Shown here: piece by piece, positions 14,509-46,714 of the stretch
How the letters are laid out: every line of letters starts with the position of its first letter
Position numbering within the stretch: the stretch's first letter is position 1
Virus record (IMG/VR): IMGVR_UViG_3300024999_000030
Span: 186,001-250,000 of that record
Direction: 5' to 3' (one strand)
DNA: 64,000 nt
Made by a program: the position numbers and the translations under genes
The notes under the pieces: model-generated
The model's input: the letters and a program-made list of their open reading frames with translations, nothing else
Databases searched by the model: none
What the model was told of the DNA's origin: nothing

Positions 14509-16993
14509 CGATGATTAATGTAATTATAACAATCGTGTTGGTATTGGTAATATTGGCCATTTGTGTTGGGTTCTATTATTTCGGGCGGTTCGAGGGTAAG
14601 ACTCTAGCTGAAATGGATTCCCTTAATAAGGCCCGAGAAGAAAATCTCAAAGCCATGAAGTCCTATCAAGACGCCCATAAATTTTATGAAGACACTACAA
14701 TCATGATTGAAAATTGGCGTAGAGAACTGAAGATTAGATGTGAAGACAATCTCAAGGCTGTTAAGCGAATTTCTAGTTTAAGTGAGACTAGATTAGATTA
14801 GATAACTTTGTAAATATAATGACATGAATAAAAAATGCAACGAATGTAAAGAAGAAAATAGTATTTTTAAAATATCCCTCGCATGTATAAAGTACCGTAA
14901 AAATGGATTAGGTAAACGCGGACACTGTTCTTTTTGTGAACATCTAAAGCGGTATCATAGCAAGAGAGACAAGGGAGAAAGAAATGAAAAAGAAACCGTT
15001 TCAATATCATGCCTCAATGGAAATGATGGGCGACGACACTTGCATGCGCACCACTAATATTGAGATGCGTATGAATCAAGATAAAAAGCGTGGTAGTAAT
15101 TCTAAAAAGAAAACCCAAACCAAGAAGCAAAATCCCAAGAGGAGTCGCTGATGCCTAAGAACGGACAAGGTACCCGAGTATTTTTATCATTTCGTAAATC
15201 TCCTCTCGGTATTATCGAAAGGGAAGAAGATAAGGATTTGAATCGCATGGATGTTTTTAATCCCGCTGCGTCAAAGAAACCAGAGACCGGTAAAGTGGTT
15301 CGTCTTAGTCGTGTGCAAGCAAGCATTCTTCGTAACCTTCATCGTATGAAAAATGGTATTTAAAAAGATATGTCATACGAAGGCTATGATCAATATCTGT
15401 GTGGGAATGGTCATTATTGGATACAAGATTGTAACAACGATAATGAAGAGTGTCCGGTATGTAAAGGAAAGTTTGTGTGGAGGAACGGTGTAAATGAAAC
15501 TAATTTTGACGGATGGGGTTATATCGACATGGAAAAGTTTCTTGTCACCCCAGCTGTTAATGTTACTTGTCCTACTTGTCACCATGAAAGCGAAAACACT
15601 CCTCCCATTTATCGCGTTCCTACTCAAGATGAAGCTAATGATGCTAAGACTTGTAGGGATGAAAACGGTAATATTATTTCTTGCAGTGAGGAGTTAAAAA
15701 GATTGGAGGCAGAAAATGATCAAGTACACTGATTCAAATGGTGAAACTTATGCTGTAGTCACCAATAGCAGAAAATTTGCCATTGCCCGCCTGAATGATG
15801 ACGGTAGTATTAAATATTTTTGTGCGGGTATGGATACTTTTCCAGACGGTGCAAGAATGTTTAAGCGAGGTGCGTTCTTTGTTAATTACTATCCATCACT
15901 TGACTTAGCTCAAAATGAACTGCAAACATATGTTGACTCTGAACAAGTGAAAGAGTGGGAAGTGGTTTCCGAACCGGAGATTAAAAATGATTAAAGTGGT
16001 TAAGACTTTCGGAGAGGTCCCAGTGGGATGGTGGGTTGAAAGTAACGATGGTCAAGTTAAACAGGCTGATGATTTTATGATCAGTCCCTACGGTTGGCCA
16101 TCGTCGCTTCCTGTAAAACATGGCATCTGTTCTAATGTTTCAGATGAACTCAAATATCTTATCAGAAAGGATGGAGCGTGATATGGAAAAAGTCGCGGAA
16201 GTTCTACAGTCTATTGCGGCACAGCTTGGAACAACGGTTGAAAATCTTTGGCCCTATATTGTAAGGCAACAGATCATTGAAGGCTGGAGTGGTATTATTA
16301 CTATTTCCATTCTTTATCTAATTTTCTTGGTTGTTTTCTTAGCGATCAGGAAAAAGGATGGAGGGGTTTGTGGAAATAATCCAAACGCATATGGGGTAGT
16401 AAAAATTGTCCTTGGTATTTTAACTGCAATTTTAACTCTCACTACTCTCTGTTGTATTCATGTTTTAATTTCTAAAATTATCAATCCAGAGTACGGAGCG
16501 TTAAAAGATTTAATGAACATGGTACACGGATATCGTTAAGGGTAAATACATGGAAACTAAACCCTTAACTCTCAGCAAAGGCTTTGCTAAAGTAAGTAAG
16601 GTCATTACGGTTGGAACGACTGGAAGAATTTTTCTAGTCAAAATGAACGAGCCATTGGGAGAAGCTAATTATGTGCTTATCCTTAACAAGTCTCGTGACC
16701 GTGAGGCTGTAAAAGATAAGATGCAAGCGGCTAGAAAAGCAAAAGGAATTGCCTGTAATAGAGGGATGAATAATCAAACTCGTAAGTCTTGGTGGGCTTG
16801 TTGGGGTTTTCCGAATAGGGAAAAAGCAAGTAAGGCTCTTCTTTTTGCTCAGAAGAATTTGTTTAAAGCTTCTGCTAAAGTTGGTAATGCTACTGTTTCC
16901 CTATTTGATGAAGTTCATCAGGACAGGGCGAAAAATTTCTTTATTGCTCATGCCAAATACCAGAAAAACTTTTCTGATAATTTGGATTAAACA

Positions 16994-19310: not shown

Positions 19311-19980
19311 TAGGGCCTCTTTCTGAATTGTAGGCTGAATTGACGAAAGCAGTGTGGACGAGATCAAACGGCTTAAATGAGCGTTTAGTCGCACTGAAAG
19401 GTTAAGGATGCCGAAGCCCTATTACATGGCGTGTCGGAAGAGGTGTCCCAGAAAGAAGGTGACTGTGTTTTATTGTCGCAGCCCTTGACTAATGTTTATA
19501 ATACAAAGTAATTGTATAAAAGAATATAATGAACGAGTAACCTGGGACGTAGGCTCATCCCCTCCTCAGGGCGTGTTAAATTTTTAAAACTGTTGCCTGA
19601 GACATCTTAACTAATGTTGGGTGTTGTAGAAGGGCGATAGTTAATTCTTGGATTAGAAATCATGCGGCCCCCTTATGATGAATTGAAACGTTTAATACCG
19701 CGCCAATCCCATAAGATGTGGTTCGAAAAACAACGCTGCAGCGTTGTAGTGACTCTAATCTAGAAAGGAGAATAACATTGGCCGCTTATATAAACATAAT
19801 GGTCAGATGTAGAAGCTCGGATTAAATAATCCCCATAACTAAAAAATGGAGTCGAGTGCCCGGGAAGTTGAACTGATATCCTTACAGGCTTTTAAAAATT
19901 AAGTCCACTATCCTGTGTTTAAAAATAAACCCAGGATCTGATGGTCAGATGTAAGATGTTATCAGTTTGCCCCGGGGCAA
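19311..19980 (+). ncRNA. Large structured non-coding region A
   Basis: No + strand ORF over 60 aa. Many stems by eye: TAGGGC/GCCCTA, CCTCTTTCTG/CAGAAAGAAGG, CTCAGG/CCTGAG, AACTGATA/TATCAGTT, CTTACA/TGTAAG, palindrome 19731..19746. Confidence 0.55.
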
Positions 19981-20035
19981 GGTTAATGCAGCCGGATGAT
20001 AATCCGCCAGTCCCAAGCCTGGAAATGCAGAGGGG
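19981..20035 (+). ncRNA. Twister ribozyme (P1-type order, weak or absent P1)
   Basis: U-AA, P2 UGC/GCA, A-GC, P3 CGGAU/AUCCG, P4 CCAG/CUGG, L4 UCCCAAGC, GA-GGG for T2 pseudoknot. Matches remembered twister consensus; predicted cut U19984/A19985. Confidence 0.85.
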
Positions 20036-20048
20036 AATAGGAAATGTT

Positions 20049-29589: not shown

Positions 29590-29592
29590 CAC

Positions 29593-29828
29593 CACATTAA
29601 CGCGGGAAGTAGGCTTAAGGGCAGCCATCTTTTAAAGAGTGAGGGCTGGCCATGTGCAGATAATATCGTCTTCGTTCGCAGGGTAGCATAAGAAGACCGA
29701 AGGATAGATTTTTAAAAATTCACAATCTATCTGGGGACGGCCATGGGCACCACTTGCAGCAAACAGAGGATTGTCAAGGACAATCTGTACTGTTCCTCTC
29801 TGGCGTAAAAGCACACCTCGTTAATGTG
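29593..29828 (+). ncRNA. 23S rRNA L11-binding (GTPase-associated centre, H43/H44) mimic with 162-nt insert
   Basis: GGAAGTAGGCTTAAGGGCAGCCATCTTTTAAAGAGT(G)...GCGTAAAAGCACAC versus remembered E. coli 23S ~1055-1104 GGAUGUUGGCUUAGAAGCAGCCAUCAUUUAAAGAAAGCGUAAUAGCUCAC; closed by perfect CACATTAACG/CGTTAATGTG. Confidence 0.8.
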
Positions 29829-30072
29829 TTTTAAATATTTGATAATGGGAGAGATAAAATGCCCACAAATAAAGTAGAAGTATTAATGGGGTCTTATGAA
29901 TCACCTAGGCCAGTAAAATGTTGTATTTGCCATTGCCCCATGTATTACATAGGGGATATTAGATATGAAGCAGAGATAAAAATGGAATTAACAAGTCATG
30001 AAATACCTTCAGTTGATCATGAAATTTTTTATGCTCATGCCAGATGTTTAATGCCATTGATCGGAGGTTGAA

Positions 30073-35546: not shown

Positions 35547-37079
35547 ATGGAACGTAAAGTAAAAACTGGTCCAAAAATTATTGGTCTCGCTTTACTTGTT
35601 ATTGGCCTTATCTTCGGTGGAAAGTGGGTGTTGAACAACACTAATATTATTCCGAAGGGATCTAGTGGTACAAGCAAATCTTTCTTTAAACACGCTAAGG
35701 AACCTCTTAAGGTTTGTGTGGTTACCTGGGGAGGTTATGCTGGTGGTCAGTATTATAATCGTGGTTTCAAACCGAATGACGACTCTCAGTATCTGAAGAA
35801 GTATGATCTTCCTGTAGAGTTTGTTGTTATCGACGATTATAACGCATCCAGAGAGGCGTGGAAGGCCGATGCAGTCCAGGTGCTGTGGACTACTGCTGAC
35901 TCGTTTCCGACCGAAGCTGGGGCACTACAGCGCGCCGGATACAAACCTAAAATCATTTTTCAGTCTGACTGGTCCCGTGGTGGAGATGTCATTGTTAGTA
36001 CCCGAGTTATTAACTCCATTCAGGATCTCAAGGGTAAGCGAGTTAGTGTTGCTTTCGGCACCCCATCCCACACCTTCCTGCTGCGTTCGTTAGAGGCGGT
36101 AGGTATGACGGTTAAAGACCTCAAACTTATTGAGGTTCCGTCTGCTGTTGATTCTGCCACGGCCTTTAAGGCTGGACAGGTTGAGGCGGCGGTGGTGTGG
36201 TCCCCTGACGATGAAGACTGCATTAGTAAGGTTTCAGGAGCTAAGGCTCTCGCTTCCACTAAACAAGCTACCCATATCATCGCCGATGTTTTCTATGCTA
36301 AGGAAGAAATTATTGAGAAGCGTAGAGACGACATCAAGGCTTTGGTAGAAGGTTGGATGATTGGTGCGGCGGAAGTTAACTCTAGCCCCACTGCCCGCTC
36401 TCAGGCTGTTAAGATTCTGGCCGAGGGTTTGAATCAACCTGATGGTTTCATTGATCAGGCAATTAACAATGTTCGCTTAAACACCTACGGAGACAATGTG
36501 AACTTCTTTAATCTTCGTGGAAGTTTTACTGGTGTAACTGGCGAACAGCTTTATCTTGAGACCGGTAGATTGTATCAGGAAAATACCAACCTGGTTCCAG
36601 ATGGTATGCCTTCCTGGAGAGTTATTAGCGATGCCAGTATTCTTCGTGATATCAATCTCACTGGCGTTAATGATGGTGCTGAATCTGACTTTAAGTTCTC
36701 TCAGCCCACCAAGTCTCTTGAAACCGCTCCAGCTCTTAGCACTAAGCGTTTATCTGTGAGCTTCGCCACGGGCTCAGCCTCTCTCGATGCCAACGCTAAG
36801 ACGATTATTGACCTTGGGTTTGTTCCCACGGCTAAGTCGTTTGCTAGTGCCCGCATCAGAATCGAAGGTAACACAGATAGTACGGGTAGTGCCTCGACCA
36901 ACGAGCGTCTTTCCTATCTTCGCGCTAAAGCTGTTGCTGGATATCTTTCCGAGCAGTATGGATTTGACAGCAATCGTTTCGTCATCGTTGGTAATGGTCC
37001 CAATAAACCAATAGCTGACAATGACACCGAAGAGGGCCGTTCTGCTAATCGTCGCACCGATTTTGAGTTGGTGCGGTAA
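35547..37079 (+). CDS. ABC substrate-binding (SsuA/NMT1-THI5-like) - OmpA C-terminal fusion
   Basis: N-terminal TM anchor; DLKGKRV..AFGTPSH..L; C-terminal FATGSASL..IEGNTDSTG..NERLSYLRAKAV..NRRTDF OmpA motifs. Confidence 0.88.
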   Translation: MERKVKTGPKIIGLALLVIGLIFGGKWVLNNTNIIPKGSSGTSKSFFKHAKEPLKVCVVTWGGYAGGQYYNRGFKPNDDSQYLKKYDLPVEFVVIDDYNASREAWKADAVQVLWTTADSFPTEAGALQRAGYKPKIIFQSDWSRGGDVIVSTRVINSIQDLKGKRVSVAFGTPSHTFLLRSLEAVGMTVKDLKLIEVPSAVDSATAFKAGQVEAAVVWSPDDEDCISKVSGAKALASTKQATHIIADVFYAKEEIIEKRRDDIKALVEGWMIGAAEVNSSPTARSQAVKILAEGLNQPDGFIDQAINNVRLNTYGDNVNFFNLRGSFTGVTGEQLYLETGRLYQENTNLVPDGMPSWRVISDASILRDINLTGVNDGAESDFKFSQPTKSLETAPALSTKRLSVSFATGSASLDANAKTIIDLGFVPTAKSFASARIRIEGNTDSTGSASTNERLSYLRAKAVAGYLSEQYGFDSNRFVIVGNGPNKPIADNDTEEGRSANRRTDFELVR

Positions 37080-37129
37080 ACTAAATTTTATAATGGGGGC
37101 CCATATTGGGCCCCCTCTATGGAGGTCAT

Positions 37130-37759
37130 ATGAAAAAGTTTCTGATTACTATGGCGTTGTCGATTTTCTGTGTTACAAACTGGGCCACTTTTACTGGGCT
37201 CACACTTATTCCTACTAGTGATTACATTGGTAAGGATGTGTGGTCTATTGGTGGGCAGGCCTGCTATACTAAGTTCCACACCGATCAGTTTCTTATTACT
37301 GAGTTTGGTTTGGGAGATAGATGTGAAGTGGGGTTTGACTTCTACGCCAATCCACAACAAGTTGAGCATCGTGAATATTTTAACTTTAAATACATGGTGC
37401 TTAAAAGCGACAGCCATAAGTTTTTTGTCAGCGTTGGGTTTTACAACATGATGGTTACTGGAAATTCCGTTCCGTTTCTTGTGGCCACTAAGGACTTGGG
37501 TTTGATTAGAGTCCACGGTGGGGTTCAATATGAAGGACTAACGGACACTAAAAGTAATTGTATGATTGGCATTGATCGTATATTTACTAATGGTTGACAA
37601 GTGTCTGCCGATTATACACATGGTCAACAGAACTTTTCTTCAATCGGCGTTGGTCGTATTGGTAAGCGTTGGCAAACTTTTGCTGGTGCCATGTATCCTA
37701 ATGCTGGCGGGCGGCCCCTTGTTATGTTGAGGATAATTTTTACTGGCAAGGGGAAGTAA
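37130..37759 (+). pseudogene. Signal-peptide protein, beta-strand rich (possible outer-membrane barrel), with in-frame TGA at 37595
   Basis: The frame continues past TGA as NG*QVSADYTHGQQNFSSIGV...LRIIFTGKGK to TAA 37759. Confidence 0.55.
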
Positions 37760-37983
37760 ATGTTTGAAATTTTAATCAGGGGTTTTAAAACTAAAGCACA
37801 AGCAGAGGCATTTTATAGCTGGTATGAAGGACAAGGAGAACAAGACGCTTGTATATGGTTTGAGTGTAGAAAAGAAGAAGGCGACATAGATGTTGATTCT
37901 ATGTTGACTGATGTCAATGTTGGGAATAAGTGGGTAGGAGATTGTTTGACCTTTGAAGTAACCCCTAATTAAACGGAGATCGC

Positions 37984-38781
37984 ATGGATAGTTTGTTTAC
38001 TTTGCGTGGAACACTGTCCAATAGAAATAAACTCATCGTAGAAATTCTTGGAGCAATGTTACTACTTGTTATTTGGTGGACGGTAGTTAGTACTGGACTT
38101 GTTCGTTCCAGCATTCTTCCTTCCCCAGTAAGCGTTATTACTTCCGTGCCAGAGTTGCATTATCAAGACGCTCTTATTATGAATTGTTTGTATTCCCTAA
38201 AACTTAATATTATGGGATACATCGAAGCAATTCTCATTGCTATTCCCCTTGGGTTTTTTATTGGTCTCATTCCAGTATGTAGGGGAATGACAGAGAGATA
38301 TATTACCGCCTTGAGATACCTTCCACTCACTGCCGTCATTGGCTTATTTATTCTGTGGTTTGGTATCGGCGATGCGATGAAGATTCAATTTTTAACTCTG
38401 GGAATTGTTGTGTATTTATTACCAGTAGTAGTGCAAAGAATCGATGAAGTCCAGCAAGTTTATCTGGACACCATTAAAACTTTAGGAGCTACTAACTGGC
38501 AAACAATTTTTAGGGTTTATATTCCCAGCGTTGTTTCTAGGATATCGGATGATATCCGTGTGCTTGTTGCTATCTCTTGGACTTATATTATCATTGCTGA
38601 AGTAGTGAACAAACAGGACGGTGGCATCGGGGCTCTTATTTTTACAGTAGCGAGACAAAGTAGGGTAGATAAGGTGTTTGCCCTTTTGGCTGTTATTATT
38701 GTAATTGGATTCACTCAAGATAAGTTATTCATGTGGTTAGATAAAATTGCGTTTCCATTTAAATATAAAGGAGGTCGATAA
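37984..38781 (+). CDS. ABC transporter permease (SsuC/TauC-like)
   Basis: About 6 TM helices; EAA-like loop (TIKTLGATNWQTIFRVYIP); IVAE-like IIAE motif. Confidence 0.9.
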   Translation: MDSLFTLRGTLSNRNKLIVEILGAMLLLVIWWTVVSTGLVRSSILPSPVSVITSVPELHYQDALIMNCLYSLKLNIMGYIEAILIAIPLGFFIGLIPVCRGMTERYITALRYLPLTAVIGLFILWFGIGDAMKIQFLTLGIVVYLLPVVVQRIDEVQQVYLDTIKTLGATNWQTIFRVYIPSVVSRISDDIRVLVAISWTYIIIAEVVNKQDGGIGALIFTVARQSRVDKVFALLAVIIVIGFTQDKLFMWLDKIAFPFKYKGGR

Positions 38782-39647
38782 TGGCACGTAGCGTTGGAGA
38801 AGAAATCATCGAGGCCGCCATTAATAATACCTCCGATGGTGTTACTTTTGAGAACACCAAATACCCAGACATAATTGAGTTAAAAGATATCTGCCAGACT
38901 TATGATGGCGGAAAAAATTACACTATTAAGAACTGCAATTTACTTATTGAAAACAAACCGGATCAGGGACAGTTTGTGGTACTACTCGGTATGTCTGGAT
39001 GTGGTAAATCCACATTGTTAAAATATATTGCTGGCCTACAGCAGCCCACATCTGGACAAGTTTTAATTGGTGGAAAACTTCGTTCCGATAAAGATATTGT
39101 CAGTATGGTATTCCAACAATATTCTTCTTTCCCATGGCTCTCTGTGCTTAAAAATGTGATGTTACCCCTAGAGCTTAAGGGCGTATCATCTAAAGAGTGC
39201 AGAGATAAGGCTATGGAAATGTTAAAACTTGTTGGGCTTGTGGAACACAAAGACAAATATGCAATGTATGGACCGTTATCCGGCGGTCAGTTACAGCGCG
39301 TTGCTATTGCCCGTAGTCTTGTTTCCAACCCTAACATCATTTTAATGGACGAGCCCTTTGGTGCTCTTGATGGGGTAACTCGTTATCAAATGCAAGTTCT
39401 TTTATCAAAGATTTGGGAGGCTCTTAAGTCAACCATTATTTTTGTTACTCATGACATTAGAGAGGCTGTATTTTTGGGAGATGATATTTATATTATGGCT
39501 CCTCATGGTGGTAAAATTCTTAAGCATTTCTTTGTAAATTTACCACTACATCGAGATTTAGATATCATGCAGGATCCAATCTTTATTGAGACCGTTCGCC
39601 AGATTGATATAGAAATGAGATCTGCTGCAGAAAAATATTTGAAATAG
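38781..39647 (+). CDS. ABC transporter ATP-binding subunit (SsuB/TauB-like)
   Basis: GMSGCGKST, MVFQ, LSGGQLQR, LMDEPFGALD, VTHD. Confidence 0.95.
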   Translation: MARSVGEEIIEAAINNTSDGVTFENTKYPDIIELKDICQTYDGGKNYTIKNCNLLIENKPDQGQFVVLLGMSGCGKSTLLKYIAGLQQPTSGQVLIGGKLRSDKDIVSMVFQQYSSFPWLSVLKNVMLPLELKGVSSKECRDKAMEMLKLVGLVEHKDKYAMYGPLSGGQLQRVAIARSLVSNPNIILMDEPFGALDGVTRYQMQVLLSKIWEALKSTIIFVTHDIREAVFLGDDIYIMAPHGGKILKHFFVNLPLHRDLDIMQDPIFIETVRQIDIEMRSAAEKYLK

Positions 39648-44665: not shown

Positions 44666-46119
44666 GGAATACCTCAATACTAAAACTAAACTTTATGCCA
44701 TCTTATTGAGATTTGATGAAAGTGATCTTAGTCCCAATGAACTCAATCTCATGCAGGCGTTAATAAAAGATACGGACATTCAGGCTATTCTGGAAAGATC
44801 GGCTTTTCAGGATAAATAAACGCGAGGAGCACCCTGCGTGGAAATGGGTGTCAACTAGTTGAAAGACTAGTCAAGGAGTTTCACATGTCTAATCTCGAAC
44901 AGCGTGCAGCGAATCTTATTAGCAAAACCTGTCACACTAACCCCCTTGTACCTGGTAAATTTGCAGGACCCTGGACTGGAATGCCTCTTGATAAAGCTAT
45001 GGCTAAGCTCAATAAAATTGACGAAGAATTGAAGGCCGAGCGAGACGAAATTACTAAAGCCATTAATAATGAGGATGCAAAAGCAAGAGCGAATTATCCC
45101 AAGCGCACAGCTTCCGATTGGGCTTATATTCGGCGCCTGAAGAAGCTTGGTGTAATTGGTTAATGAATAAGGCTCAAGGAGAAACTATGAAGAAAATTTT
45201 AGTTTGTTTTCTATTTACGGTTTTGGTAATTGGTTTTATGGGTTGTAGCATTAGCCCAACCAAAAGTCGACAAGCAGTCGTATCAAAATATGGTCCTGAG
45301 GTTCAGAGTTTACCAGAGTTTAGCTATATATTTATAGCTAGGAAAACTAACGGAGAAGTTTGGTATGTATCCTGTTTGAACTCTAATGATAATAATATCT
45401 CTGAAGAGACCCTATTATTTGGTCCAATTAAAAATCAGCAATAAACATGTTTAAGTTATTTAATCTTTTAAAATTATGCTTTAAAGATTTATTTTCTAAT
45501 AGACCGATGACTGAGACCGATATGAAATCAGCCTTAGCAATGTGCGGTATTCGTTTTTACTCTTGTCCGTATTGCGGTAAGGAACTCACCGAGTATGAAC
45601 TTAAACATGGGCTTCGTGAAGACCAAGATGATACCGGACCTATGTAGGAGGTGCAATTGGACGATTACGATGAAGCTGAATCAAATAATTCAAGTATAGA
45701 AAATGGAGTGTGGTACGCATTTAAATGTCCAGTATGTCTCGTTGAACAGTCGGCGTGGTGGCTTAGGGGATATATCGAAATGAAACAACATGAGCCACTT
45801 GAAACTATACGCCTCTGTCCTAAATGTAACGCAGAATTGAAATTTACCGTAGACAGACATACCAAAGGCATTTGTACCGTTGAAAGGAACAGGAGATGAG
45901 GCTTCAACAAGTAGAATCATATCCTAAAGCTAACGATGAATACTGGACAGAAATAAGTCTAGGAAATGCGATTGCCATTTCATTTACAGTTAATGAAAAT
46001 GGGGAGTGTAACAAAGCTCTTATATCTGATATGCGGGATGGCATTCAATTTGAAATAGATTTTTTAGCTAAAACAAGTTGGTATGACAGAGCTGTTATGA
46101 AAGCGAAAGAGGTAAAATT

Positions 46120-46482
46120 ATGTCTGCACAAAATAATTTCATCTTAACAGTAAAGTCTTTAATCAGCGCTGGTAAAAAAATTGAAGCCATTAAGGAAGTG
46201 AGAGAGGTTTTACTTCTTGGTTTAAGGGATGCTAAGGATTTAATTGATGCCTGTGAGGCTGAGAAGAGTATGGAACCGCTCACTAGAGTCGCTAGAAACA
46301 TTGCCTCGCAAACTGTCAAAGGTTCTCCAAGTATTGTATTAGTTGTTTTTGACGGAGAGGATTCTAGTGTATCTTGTCGGCTCTCTATTGGCACCTTTTC
46401 CTGTAAGGATGTGACTGAAGTTCAAATCAAGCGGGCCATTGCTATGATAGGGGCTGCTCAAAATTGCGATGTCCAAGAATAA
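46120..46482 (+). CDS. Protein with ribosomal bL12 (L7/L12) C-terminal-domain-like motif
   Basis: GKKIEAIKEVREVLLLGLRDAKDLID resembles the remembered L12 motif [24 protein letters not shown]; no L12 N-terminal domain. Confidence 0.65.
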   Translation: MSAQNNFILTVKSLISAGKKIEAIKEVREVLLLGLRDAKDLIDACEAEKSMEPLTRVARNIASQTVKGSPSIVLVVFDGEDSSVSCRLSIGTFSCKDVTEVQIKRAIAMIGAAQNCDVQE

Positions 46483-46714
46483 TTTAGATTCAAGTCTTCA
46501 GAAATTTTTAAGTGAAATTCCATCTGCACCAACAATACCAAATCCACCAGAAGTTCTTTTTACGGCTGAAGAACAAGATAAGGACTTAGAGGCTTGGCTT
46601 AAAACGCTTCCAGTTTCAAACGCCCCAAACGATGAAGCGGCGACATGGCTGAGTACCTTTGAGGCTAGTCTGGGTGAAAGATGGAAGCGAATGAAAAGAG
46701 ACAGGAGTAATTAA

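What the first reader, a model, noticed from the sequence alone, without database searches (positions are those of the whole stretch)
46120..46482. bL12-CTD-like protein: possible protein partner to the GAC RNA mimic
Seen: the L12 helix-turn-helix motif near the N-terminus, fused to an unknown C-terminal domain and lacking the L10-binding N-terminal domain. Known: phage bL12-like genes exist, and the L12 CTD and the L11-rRNA domain are the two stalk elements that recruit translational GTPases. Inference: the phage mimics both halves of the factor-binding site, forming an off-ribosome decoy or remodeller for EF-G, EF-Tu, IF2 or RelA.
Basis: inference. Interest (0 to 1): 0.7.

Follow-up and report, generated by a model that had tools for sequence, protein, structure and literature searches.

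The report
Phage protein with short L12-like module
A small gene in a 333-kb groundwater phage really does carry the two-helix piece of ribosomal protein L12 that normally greets translation factors, but it belongs to a large, uncharacterised family of such short modules, and nothing ties it to the ribosomal-RNA look-alike 16 kb away.

Summary
Window 46120-46482 (+) is a real gene of 120 aa under purifying selection. Residues 18-46 match Pfam Ribosomal_L12 (30.5 bits, cut-off 25.9), but only profile positions 10-38 of 67, which are helices 4 and 5. There is no L10-binding N-terminal domain. The C-terminal half has relatives only in this phage's own lineage.

The match is not to a whole L12 C-terminal domain. 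Residues 3-48 form a three-helix unit of about 45 aa. The same unit occurs, mostly in tandem copies, in at least 1,252 clusters of non-ribosomal proteins and also as free-standing 48-63 aa proteins.

The "GAC RNA mimic" is also real (29604-29651, aligning to bacterial 23S model positions 1095-1146). It is widespread: 68 viral contigs and about ten cultured large phages. Of 50 RNA-bearing records, 43 have no L12-like gene. The rate of 7/50 does not differ significantly from tRNA-bearing control phages (2/40, p=0.29). This protein family is found only in one collinear lineage.

The partnership is therefore unsupported. Docking of a host translational GTPase remains an untested inference. This is a new member of a known kind and of modest interest.

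The parts
46120..46482 (+). Complete gene of 120 aa (ATG start, TAA stop). It overlaps the upstream ORF (45896-46147) by 28 nt and the downstream ORF (46469-46714) by 14 nt.
   Evidence: The orthologue of the same length sits in the same gene order in the collinear relative. pN 0.26 against pS 0.88.
46107..46113 (+). Shine-Dalgarno-like AAGAGGT, 6 nt upstream of the ATG
   Evidence: Read directly from the sequence. No function was tested.
46126..46263 (+). Residues 3-48: a three-helix unit (H3-16, H20-31, H35-48), the short L12-like module
   Evidence: AF2 pLDDT is 92-94 with a 93-sequence alignment. It superposes at rmsd 1.0-2.7 A over 43-49 residues on AFDB models auto-named 'bL12 C-terminal domain-containing', including proteins of 48 and 63 aa. 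phmmer hits map to query residues about 10-50.
46171..46257 (+). Residues 18-46: the stretch matching helices 4 and 5 of the bL12 C-terminal domain (GKKIEAIKEVREVLLLGLRDAKDLIDAC)
   Evidence: Pfam PF00542 at 30.5 bits, profile positions 10-38 of 67. hhalign probability 97%. PDB bL12 alignments. In the module family K20, I21, A23, I24, K25, G34, A38 and K39 are at least 90% conserved, and R28 and L35 are invariant.
46273..46311 (+). Residues 52-64: a fourth helix that follows the module. It is conserved only within the lineage.
   Evidence: AF2 models and the alignment with P0002.
46312..46479 (+). Residues 65-120: the lineage-specific C-terminal half, predicted as strand-strand-strand-helix. 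Cysteines C86, C95 and C116 (plus C45 in the module) are invariant between the two known orthologues.
   Evidence: AF2 gives the same topology in both runs, but pLDDT is only 55-72. Nothing was found in Pfam, PHROGs, the ESM Atlas, PDB or AFDB. hhalign against the L12 CTD gives 1% probability. The cysteines are seen.

Best explanation
This is a small soluble phage protein. It displays one copy of the short L12-like three-helix module (residues 3-48), followed by a fourth helix and a lineage-specific, cysteine-containing, strand-rich C-terminal half.

Shown:
- The gene is real and constrained.
- The module is homologous to helices 4-5 of the bL12 C-terminal domain and keeps the residues that are invariant there.
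- It lacks the domain that anchors bL12 to uL10, so it cannot be a stalk subunit.
- It belongs to a very large family of autonomous short modules found in non-ribosomal proteins.

Inferred: helices 4-5 are the surface through which bL12 contacts EF-Tu, EF-G, IF2 and RF3. The module therefore most likely docks a host translational GTPase, or another protein that recognises that surface, away from the ribosome. The C-terminal half would supply the phage-specific activity or a second partner. The outcome would be titration or redirection of a translation factor during infection. The GAC-like RNA need not be involved.
For: Profile and profile-profile matches are restricted to helices 4-5. The ungapped alignment to E. 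coli bL12 puts K20, I21, I24, K25, R28, G34, L35, R36, D37, A38 and K39 on K65, V66, I69, K70, R73, G79, L80, K81, E82, A83 and K84. The register comes; the E. coli numbering is from my own knowledge. The same positions are 90-100% conserved over 93 module sequences. Helices 4-5 as the factor-contact site is established knowledge: Kothe et al. 2004 and Helgstrand et al. 2007, as cited in PMC3299993, and PMC3505967. The module is autonomous: of the 152 proteins held from the searches (mostly the 150 best hits), 143 carry only short modules, with 410 copies in total, and it exists as a free-standing 48-63 aa protein. Both halves are under purifying selection. The phage invests in translation, with 29 tRNA genes. 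Mizuno et al. proposed that viral bL12-domain proteins offer interfaces for translation factors (PMC6375957).
Against: There is no binding evidence of any kind. The EF-Tu complex prediction returned 'no answer'. No solved structure, bL12 CTD included, matches the model, so the helices sit in a different scaffold. Some 'factor-contact' hydrophobic residues (I21, I24, L35) may be buried in the three-helix bundle. T76 and G77 of the canonical TGLGL turn are L31 and L32 here. The short-module family is functionally uncharacterised, and its members have heterogeneous partner domains (membrane anchor, LRV repeats, beta-propeller) and uninformative gene neighbourhoods. The neighbouring phage genes have no recognised translation function (no family hit above a curated cut-off), so context gives no help.
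Confidence: 0.35

Rival explanations
1. The module is a generic helical adaptor or scaffold that has drifted away from any translation role. In this reading it is a compact three-helix unit reused in many proteins for oligomerisation or for binding an unrelated partner, and the phage protein works through its C-terminal half.
For: At least 1,252 clusters carry the module, in very different architectures and usually in tandem arrays separated by Pro/Ala/Ser-rich linkers. The predicted fold is an all-helical bundle rather than the alpha/beta L12 CTD. Bacterial neighbourhoods show no translation link.
Against: The residues conserved across the module family are the same ones that are invariant in genuine bL12. 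That is hard to explain without retention of the same interaction or very recent repeated origin from rplL. Identity to real bL12 over the hairpin is high.
Confidence: 0.3
2. One reading: the protein and the GAC-like RNA, possibly with host uL11, assemble into an off-ribosome copy of the stalk base that decoys or activates EF-G, EF-Tu, IF2 or RelA.
For: Both elements exist in the same genome and in its collinear relatives. The RNA aligns to 23S model positions 1094-1147. Complete bL12 genes are somewhat more frequent in RNA-bearing phages, at 5/50 against 0/40 controls (two-sided p=0.063, or p=0.12 after collapsing one duplicate lineage). One L12-module phage (G057) has an rRNA-identical core about 8 kb from its L12-like gene.
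Against: The elements are 16.5 kb apart with dozens of genes between them. 43 of 50 RNA-bearing records, and all of about ten cultured RNA-bearing phages, show no L12-like gene. Overall enrichment is not significant (p=0.29). G003 and G004 carry the RNA, share only 10 and 7 of the 1,156 ORFs of the window's genome, and have no L12-like gene. No phage uL11 is found in the own genome or in the 50 RNA-bearing records. bL12 does not bind rRNA itself (established knowledge), and the uL11-contacting part of the CTD is not detectable here (PMC3505967).
Confidence: 0.07
3. It replaces host bL12 on the ribosome, as proposed for some phage-encoded ribosomal proteins.
For: Phage bL12-domain proteins have been reported in ribosome fractions (PMC6375957).
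Against: There is no dimerisation/uL10-binding N-terminal domain and no complete CTD. In the cited study the tagged phage bL12-domain protein could not be used to affinity-purify ribosomes.
Confidence: 0.03

Closest known systems
Bacterial ribosomal protein bL12 (L7/L12), C-terminal domain (Pfam PF00542)
   Same: It shares the helix 4 - turn - helix 5 sequence, including the invariant K, I, K, R, G-L, A-K positions.
   Different: It has no N-terminal uL10-binding domain and no hinge. Strand 1, strand 2, helix 6 and strand 3 are not detectable. The predicted scaffold is an all-helical bundle plus an unrelated C-terminal half, with no structural match to solved CTDs.
Phage-encoded bL12-domain proteins (Mizuno et al. 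2019, PMC6375957)
   Same: It is a phage gene with a PF00542 match embedded next to unrelated sequence. Such genes are acquired sporadically, and homologous contexts often lack the domain. Other examples were seen here (L009).
   Different: From the coverage figures in their table (about 65-67 residues, my calculation), the published cases look like whole CTDs, and they are mostly in podoviruses under 80 kb. This one carries only the 29-45 residue hairpin module and sits in a 333-kb phage.
Short L12-like repeat modules in non-ribosomal proteins (partial PF00542 hits, often with DUF6793/PF20593; auto-named 'bL12 C-terminal domain-containing protein')
   Same: This is the best sequence and structure match: the same 45-aa three-helix unit at 33-55% identity and rmsd 1.0-2.7 A.
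   Different: Those proteins usually hold 2-7 tandem copies, often behind a membrane anchor. This one has a single copy, no anchor and a unique C-terminal half. I found no literature on the function of this family.
EF-Ts N-terminal domain (recalled from the literature as sharing a motif with L7/L12 helices 4-5 for contacting EF-Tu helix D)
   Same: It is a helical hairpin with a TG-x-G-hydrophobic turn, followed by a third helix. That would be a precedent for this motif binding EF-Tu outside the ribosome.
   Different: This is a lead from memory only. No Pfam or fold-search hit to EF-Ts was obtained here.

Membership tests
Ribosomal protein bL12 | N-terminal dimerisation / uL10-binding domain (PF16320) and flexible hinge | tested here: not met
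   No PF16320 hit appears at E<=10, and only 17 residues precede the motif.
Ribosomal protein bL12 | Complete C-terminal alpha/beta domain (67 profile positions: strand 1, helices 4-5, strand 2, helix 6, strand 3) | tested here: not met
   Only profile positions 10-38 match. hhalign covers columns 12-39 only. The C-terminal half scores 1% probability against the CTD. No solved CTD appears among the fold matches.
Ribosomal protein bL12 | Conserved helix 4-5 residues used for translation-factor contact | tested here: met
   K20, I21, I24, K25, R28, G34, L35, A38 and K39 align with the invariant bL12 positions. T76 and G77 are replaced by L31 and L32.
Ribosomal protein bL12 | Binds translational GTPases / is part of the 50S stalk | not testable with these tools
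   The complex prediction with E. coli EF-Tu gave no answer.
Short L12-like three-helix module proteins (partial PF00542 / DUF6793 type) | Autonomous unit of about 45 aa matching only PF00542 columns about 10-40, preceded by a helix in place of strand 1 | tested here: met
   (143 of 152 proteins carry only short modules). One search gives helices at 3-16, 20-31 and 35-48. One search gives rmsd 1.0-2.7 A to such proteins.
Short L12-like three-helix module proteins (partial PF00542 / DUF6793 type) | Tandem repetition and/or N-terminal membrane anchor (common but not universal) | tested here: not met
   There is a single module and no PF20593 hit.
Phage-encoded bL12-domain proteins (Mizuno 2019) | Encoded in a phage genome, with a PF00542 match above the curated threshold | tested here: met
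   The record is a 332,730-bp virus record rated 100% complete by CheckV. The match is 30.5 bits against a cut-off of 25.9.
Proposed stalk-base mimic (GAC-like RNA plus L12-like protein) | The two elements co-occur across independent phage lineages more often than expected | tested here: not met
   7/50 RNA-bearing records against 2/40 controls have PF00542 (p=0.29). 4/50 L12-module records have the RNA core, against 0/40 controls (3/49 after excluding the own lineage; p=0.25). The protein family itself occurs in one lineage only. The samples are small, and a weak excess of complete bL12 genes (p=0.06) is not excluded.
Proposed stalk-base mimic (GAC-like RNA plus L12-like protein) | Genomic linkage (adjacent or co-transcribed) | tested here: not met
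   They lie 16.5 kb apart in the window and 14.3 kb apart in the relative, with many ORFs between. No transcript data exist.
Proposed stalk-base mimic (GAC-like RNA plus L12-like protein) | Presence of the L12 surface that contacts uL11 (cleft between helices 4 and 6, K95) | tested here: inconclusive
   No helix 6 or strand 2 equivalent is detectable by profile comparison (the feature is defined in PMC3505967). A diverged equivalent cannot be excluded given the low-confidence model.

The most novel reading that the evidence does not exclude
The short helix 4-5 module is a portable docking tag for translational GTPases, used by more than a thousand uncharacterised protein families. In this phage it is tethered to a private effector domain. 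In the most ambitious version it works together with the widespread phage GAC-like RNA and host uL11 as an off-ribosome stalk base that captures or triggers EF-G, EF-Tu or RelA.
Probability: 0.08. Interest if true: 0.75.

Novelty: new member of a known kind. Interest (0 to 1): 0.3.

Why it matters
If the module does bind translation factors off the ribosome, this phage protein would be a compact, tractable entry point to two things. One is a very large protein family with no assigned function. The other is a new way for phages to tamper with elongation or initiation factors. As the evidence stands, it is one more sporadic phage acquisition of an L12-derived piece. The more interesting object in this genome is the GAC-like RNA, which is widespread in large phages and appears to be independent of this gene.

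Tried and rejected
- **C-terminal half as the rest of an L12 CTD split by an insertion.** By eye, residues 99-115 resemble helix 6. hhalign gives 1% probability and prefers a meaningless match to helix 5, so I rejected this.
- **A degenerate second module copy in the C-terminal half.** The alignment with P0003 suggested it. The spacing does not fit and AF2 predicts strands there, so I rejected it.
- **Fold searches.** Foldseek against PDB on both models, VIA-align wide, and the ESM Atlas on residues 50-120 gave nothing above noise.
- **EF-Tu complex prediction.** No answer.
- **Phage-collection searches** with the locus DNA and with the protein: no match.
- **Neighbour annotation.** Only weak hits to a phosphoribosyltransferase and zinc ribbons.
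- **Bacterial gene neighbourhoods** of two module proteins: uninformative.
- **Synteny.** The similar 12-18 kb spacing between the RNA and L12-like genes in G017 and G027 is not synteny. Those regions share almost no genes with this phage.
- **Transcript evidence.** Only groundwater DNA runs hold the sequence.
- **Promoter and terminator scan.** At chance level.
- **Literature on the short module or DUF6793.** Nothing relevant.

Full report
**What is there.**
The window is bases 186001-250000 of a 332,730-bp IMG/VR virus record that CheckV rates 100% complete. The same sequence is held in groundwater metagenome runs. The flagged interval is exactly one ORF, 46120-46482 (+), of 120 aa with an ATG start and TAA stop, and AAGAGGT lies 6 nt upstream. 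It overlaps the upstream ORF by 28 nt and the downstream ORF by 14 nt, inside a long run of small same-strand genes. None of these neighbours has an informative family match.

**Is the gene real?**
A collinear relative, a 62-kb JGI contig, matches 97 of the 1,156 ORFs listed for the window's genome at 31-96% identity (most at 35-96%). It carries an orthologue of the same length in the same gene order, 57% identical. Between the two, pN is 0.26 and pS is 0.88 (saturated), and both halves are constrained. A second viral contig (G002) encodes an identical protein.

**Is the motif L12-like?**
Yes.
- Pfam Ribosomal_L12 (PF00542) scores 30.5 bits against a cut-off of 25.9 (E 4.5e-7). It covers residues 18-46, equal to profile positions 10-38 of 67.
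- hhalign of the three-sequence family against twelve complete CTD copies gives 97% probability for residues 19-46 against columns 12-39.
- All clearly better PDB sequence hits are bL12 chains, over the same stretch.
- The ungapped register puts K20, I21, I24, K25, R28, G34, L35, R36, D37, A38 and K39 on E. coli K65, V66, I69, K70, R73, G79, L80, K81, E82, A83 and K84. The numbering is from my own knowledge.
- These lie in helices 4 and 5, the region through which bL12 contacts EF-Tu, EF-G, IF2 and RF3 (Kothe 2004 and Helgstrand 2007, as cited in PMC3299993; PMC3505967).
- No L12 N-terminal domain is present.

**What kind of L12-like element is it?**
It is not a whole C-terminal domain.
- A full HMMER scan of 1.84 billion cluster representatives found 1,252 proteins at E<=0.001. 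Apart from the one orthologue, essentially all match through query residues about 10-50 (a few stretches run to residue 72-89), typically in 2-7 stretches per protein.
- Of the 152 proteins held from the searches (mostly the 150 best hits), 143 contain only short modules (410 copies, CTD columns about 10-40). Nine contain complete CTDs.
- Their other domains are heterogeneous: an N-terminal membrane anchor with DUF6793, LRV repeats, or a beta-propeller.
- AlphaFold2 with a 93-sequence alignment gives helices at 3-16, 20-31, 35-48 and 52-64 with pLDDT about 87-94. A strand-strand-strand-helix C-terminal half follows at pLDDT 55-72 (one search gives the same topology).
- Against AlphaFold DB clusters, residues 1-48 superpose at rmsd 1.0-2.7 A on models auto-named 'bL12 C-terminal domain-containing protein'. 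These include free-standing proteins of 48 and 63 aa.
- No solved structure, bL12 CTD included, matches.

The N-terminal part is thus an autonomous three-helix unit derived from helices 4-5, with a helix where strand 1 would be.

**The C-terminal half.**
Residues 65-120 have no relatives outside the lineage and no family, Atlas or fold match. I tested whether this half is the remainder of a CTD split by an insertion. hhalign says no, at 1% probability. Cysteines 45, 86, 95 and 116 are invariant in the two orthologues. I did not follow this up.

**The alleged RNA partner.**
The 270-nt intergenic region 29590-29858 contains GGCTTAAGGGCAGCCATCTTTTAAAGAG.
- Rfam's bacterial LSU model aligns locally to 29604-29651 at model positions 1095-1146, the helix 42-44 GTPase-associated centre (E 0.21). 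It aligns to a homologous element in another phage at positions 1094-1147 (E 5.6e-4).
- The core pattern occurs in 68 viral contigs. A reversed control pattern four times looser gives only 13.
- The flanks co-vary as a helix-43-like stem.
- The element also occurs, unannotated, in cultured large phages of Aeromonas, Pseudomonas, Ralstonia, Vibrio, Cronobacter (GAP32), Acinetobacter (ME3) and Paenibacillus.

The RNA is real and interesting in its own right.

**Is the protein its partner?**
The evidence says no.
- The two lie 16.5 kb apart, and 14.3 kb apart in the relative, which has the core variant GGCTTAGAGGCAGCCACC.
- Their joint presence in three genomes is explained by collinearity of one lineage.
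- G003 (292 kb) and G004 (153 kb) carry the RNA. They share only 10 and 7 of the 1,156 ORFs of the window's genome, and they have neither this protein nor any PF00542 hit.
- Among 50 RNA-bearing viral records, 7 have a PF00542 hit. Among 40 tRNA-bearing viral contigs of at least 34 kb used as controls, 2 do, and none has the RNA. Fisher gives p=0.29.
- Among 50 viral records chosen for an L12-like module, 4 have an RNA-like core, one of them the own lineage.
- tblastn with a phage full-length bL12 found no hit in any of the cultured RNA-bearing phages.
- No phage uL11 was found in the own genome or in the 50 RNA-bearing records.

One hint remains. Complete bL12 genes, several of them full-length with the N-terminal domain, occur in 5 of 50 RNA-bearing records against 0 of 40 controls. 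This gives p=0.063, or p=0.12 after collapsing one duplicated lineage. That concerns genuine bL12 genes, not this protein, and it needs a proper census.

On mechanism, bL12 does not bind rRNA. Its contact with uL11 uses the cleft between helices 4 and 6 with K95 (PMC3505967), and those elements are not detectable here.

**Most likely function.**
The module preserves the residues that genuine bL12 uses for factor contact, and it cannot be anchored to the ribosome. I therefore think the protein most likely docks a host translational GTPase, or another reader of that surface, off the ribosome, with the private C-terminal half providing the phage-specific consequence. This is inference, at confidence about 0.35. 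The single complex prediction with E. coli EF-Tu returned 'no answer' and counts neither way. The main rival is that the module is a generic helical adaptor with no remaining translation role (0.3). The stalk-base mimic with the RNA is unlikely (0.07), and ribosome incorporation is very unlikely (0.03).

**Comparison with what is known.**
Phage proteins carrying bL12 domains in variable contexts were described by Mizuno et al. (PMC6375957), who suggested they offer interfaces for translation factors. This gene is a further example. It differs in carrying only the short module and in sitting in a 333-kb phage. I found no literature on the short-module family itself.

**Verdict.**
This is a new member of a known kind, with interest 0.3.

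Noticed in passing
window 29590-29858 (core 29604-29651, + strand): This is a structured intergenic RNA whose 5' part aligns to the helix 42-44 GTPase-associated centre of the bacterial 23S model. The core occurs in 68 viral contigs, against 13 for a looser reversed control, and the stem flanks co-vary. It also occurs, unannotated, in cultured large phages such as Cronobacter GAP32, Acinetobacter ME3, Pseudomonas pf16 and Ralstonia RSP15. No Rfam family matches it, and the one targeted literature search turned up nothing. It looks like a widespread, undescribed phage RNA class and deserves its own study.
   Followed up: partly
window 19980-20038 (+): A twister-P1 ribozyme-like element scores 49.2 bits at E 6e-8 over the full model length. 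It is below Rfam's gathering score of 67.2.
   Followed up: no
G000:C1:11061-33549 and 179810-180473 (outside the window): ARAGORN tRNA genes in the phage genome. One at 14708-14783 has a CTA anticodon (it reads TAG), which hints at amber suppression or stop-codon recoding.
   Followed up: no
L158:4418-4789 (G017), L160:2906-3283 (G026), L161:3963-4331 minus strand (G013): Three other RNA-bearing phage contigs encode full-length bL12 homologues of 122-125 aa, complete with the N-terminal dimerisation domain. Complete CTDs are found in 5/50 RNA-bearing records against 0/40 control records (p=0.063).
   Followed up: partly
L156:4905-5171 and L156:7664-7909 (G027, 335 kb, terminal repeats): Two paralogous 81-88 aa proteins lie 2.7 kb apart and 12-15 kb from that phage's GAC-like RNA. 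Each consists of an L12-like hairpin followed by a short strand-rich tail. They resemble the window protein only in the hairpin.
   Followed up: partly
window 35547-39647 (+): This is a phage-borne ABC-transporter-like cluster. The orthologues in the relative carry a phosphonate-binding/NMT1 domain plus OmpA (510 aa), a BPD_transp_1 permease and an ABC_tran ATPase. They are 87-91% identical to the window ORFs at 35547-37079, 37984-38781 and 38781-39647.
   Followed up: no
window 46252-46254, 46375-46377, 46402-46404, 46465-46467: Four cysteines (C45, C86, C95, C116) are invariant between the two 57%-identical orthologues. They may form a metal site or disulfides linking the module to the C-terminal half.
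   Followed up: no
L012:1420-1707 (G001, 198 kb, RNA-bearing): A 95-aa ORF in a high-GC phage has a weak whole-domain PF00542 match (positions 3-65, 15.5 bits, E 0.004, below the cut-off).
   Followed up: no
phage collection records OR845016, OR850018, OR847528, OR849073 and similar: Very short 'phage' records (2-12 kb, unannotated) from Staphylococcus, Listeria and Salmonella match 23S-like and rplL sequences. They look like bacterial fragments filed as phage.
   Followed up: no
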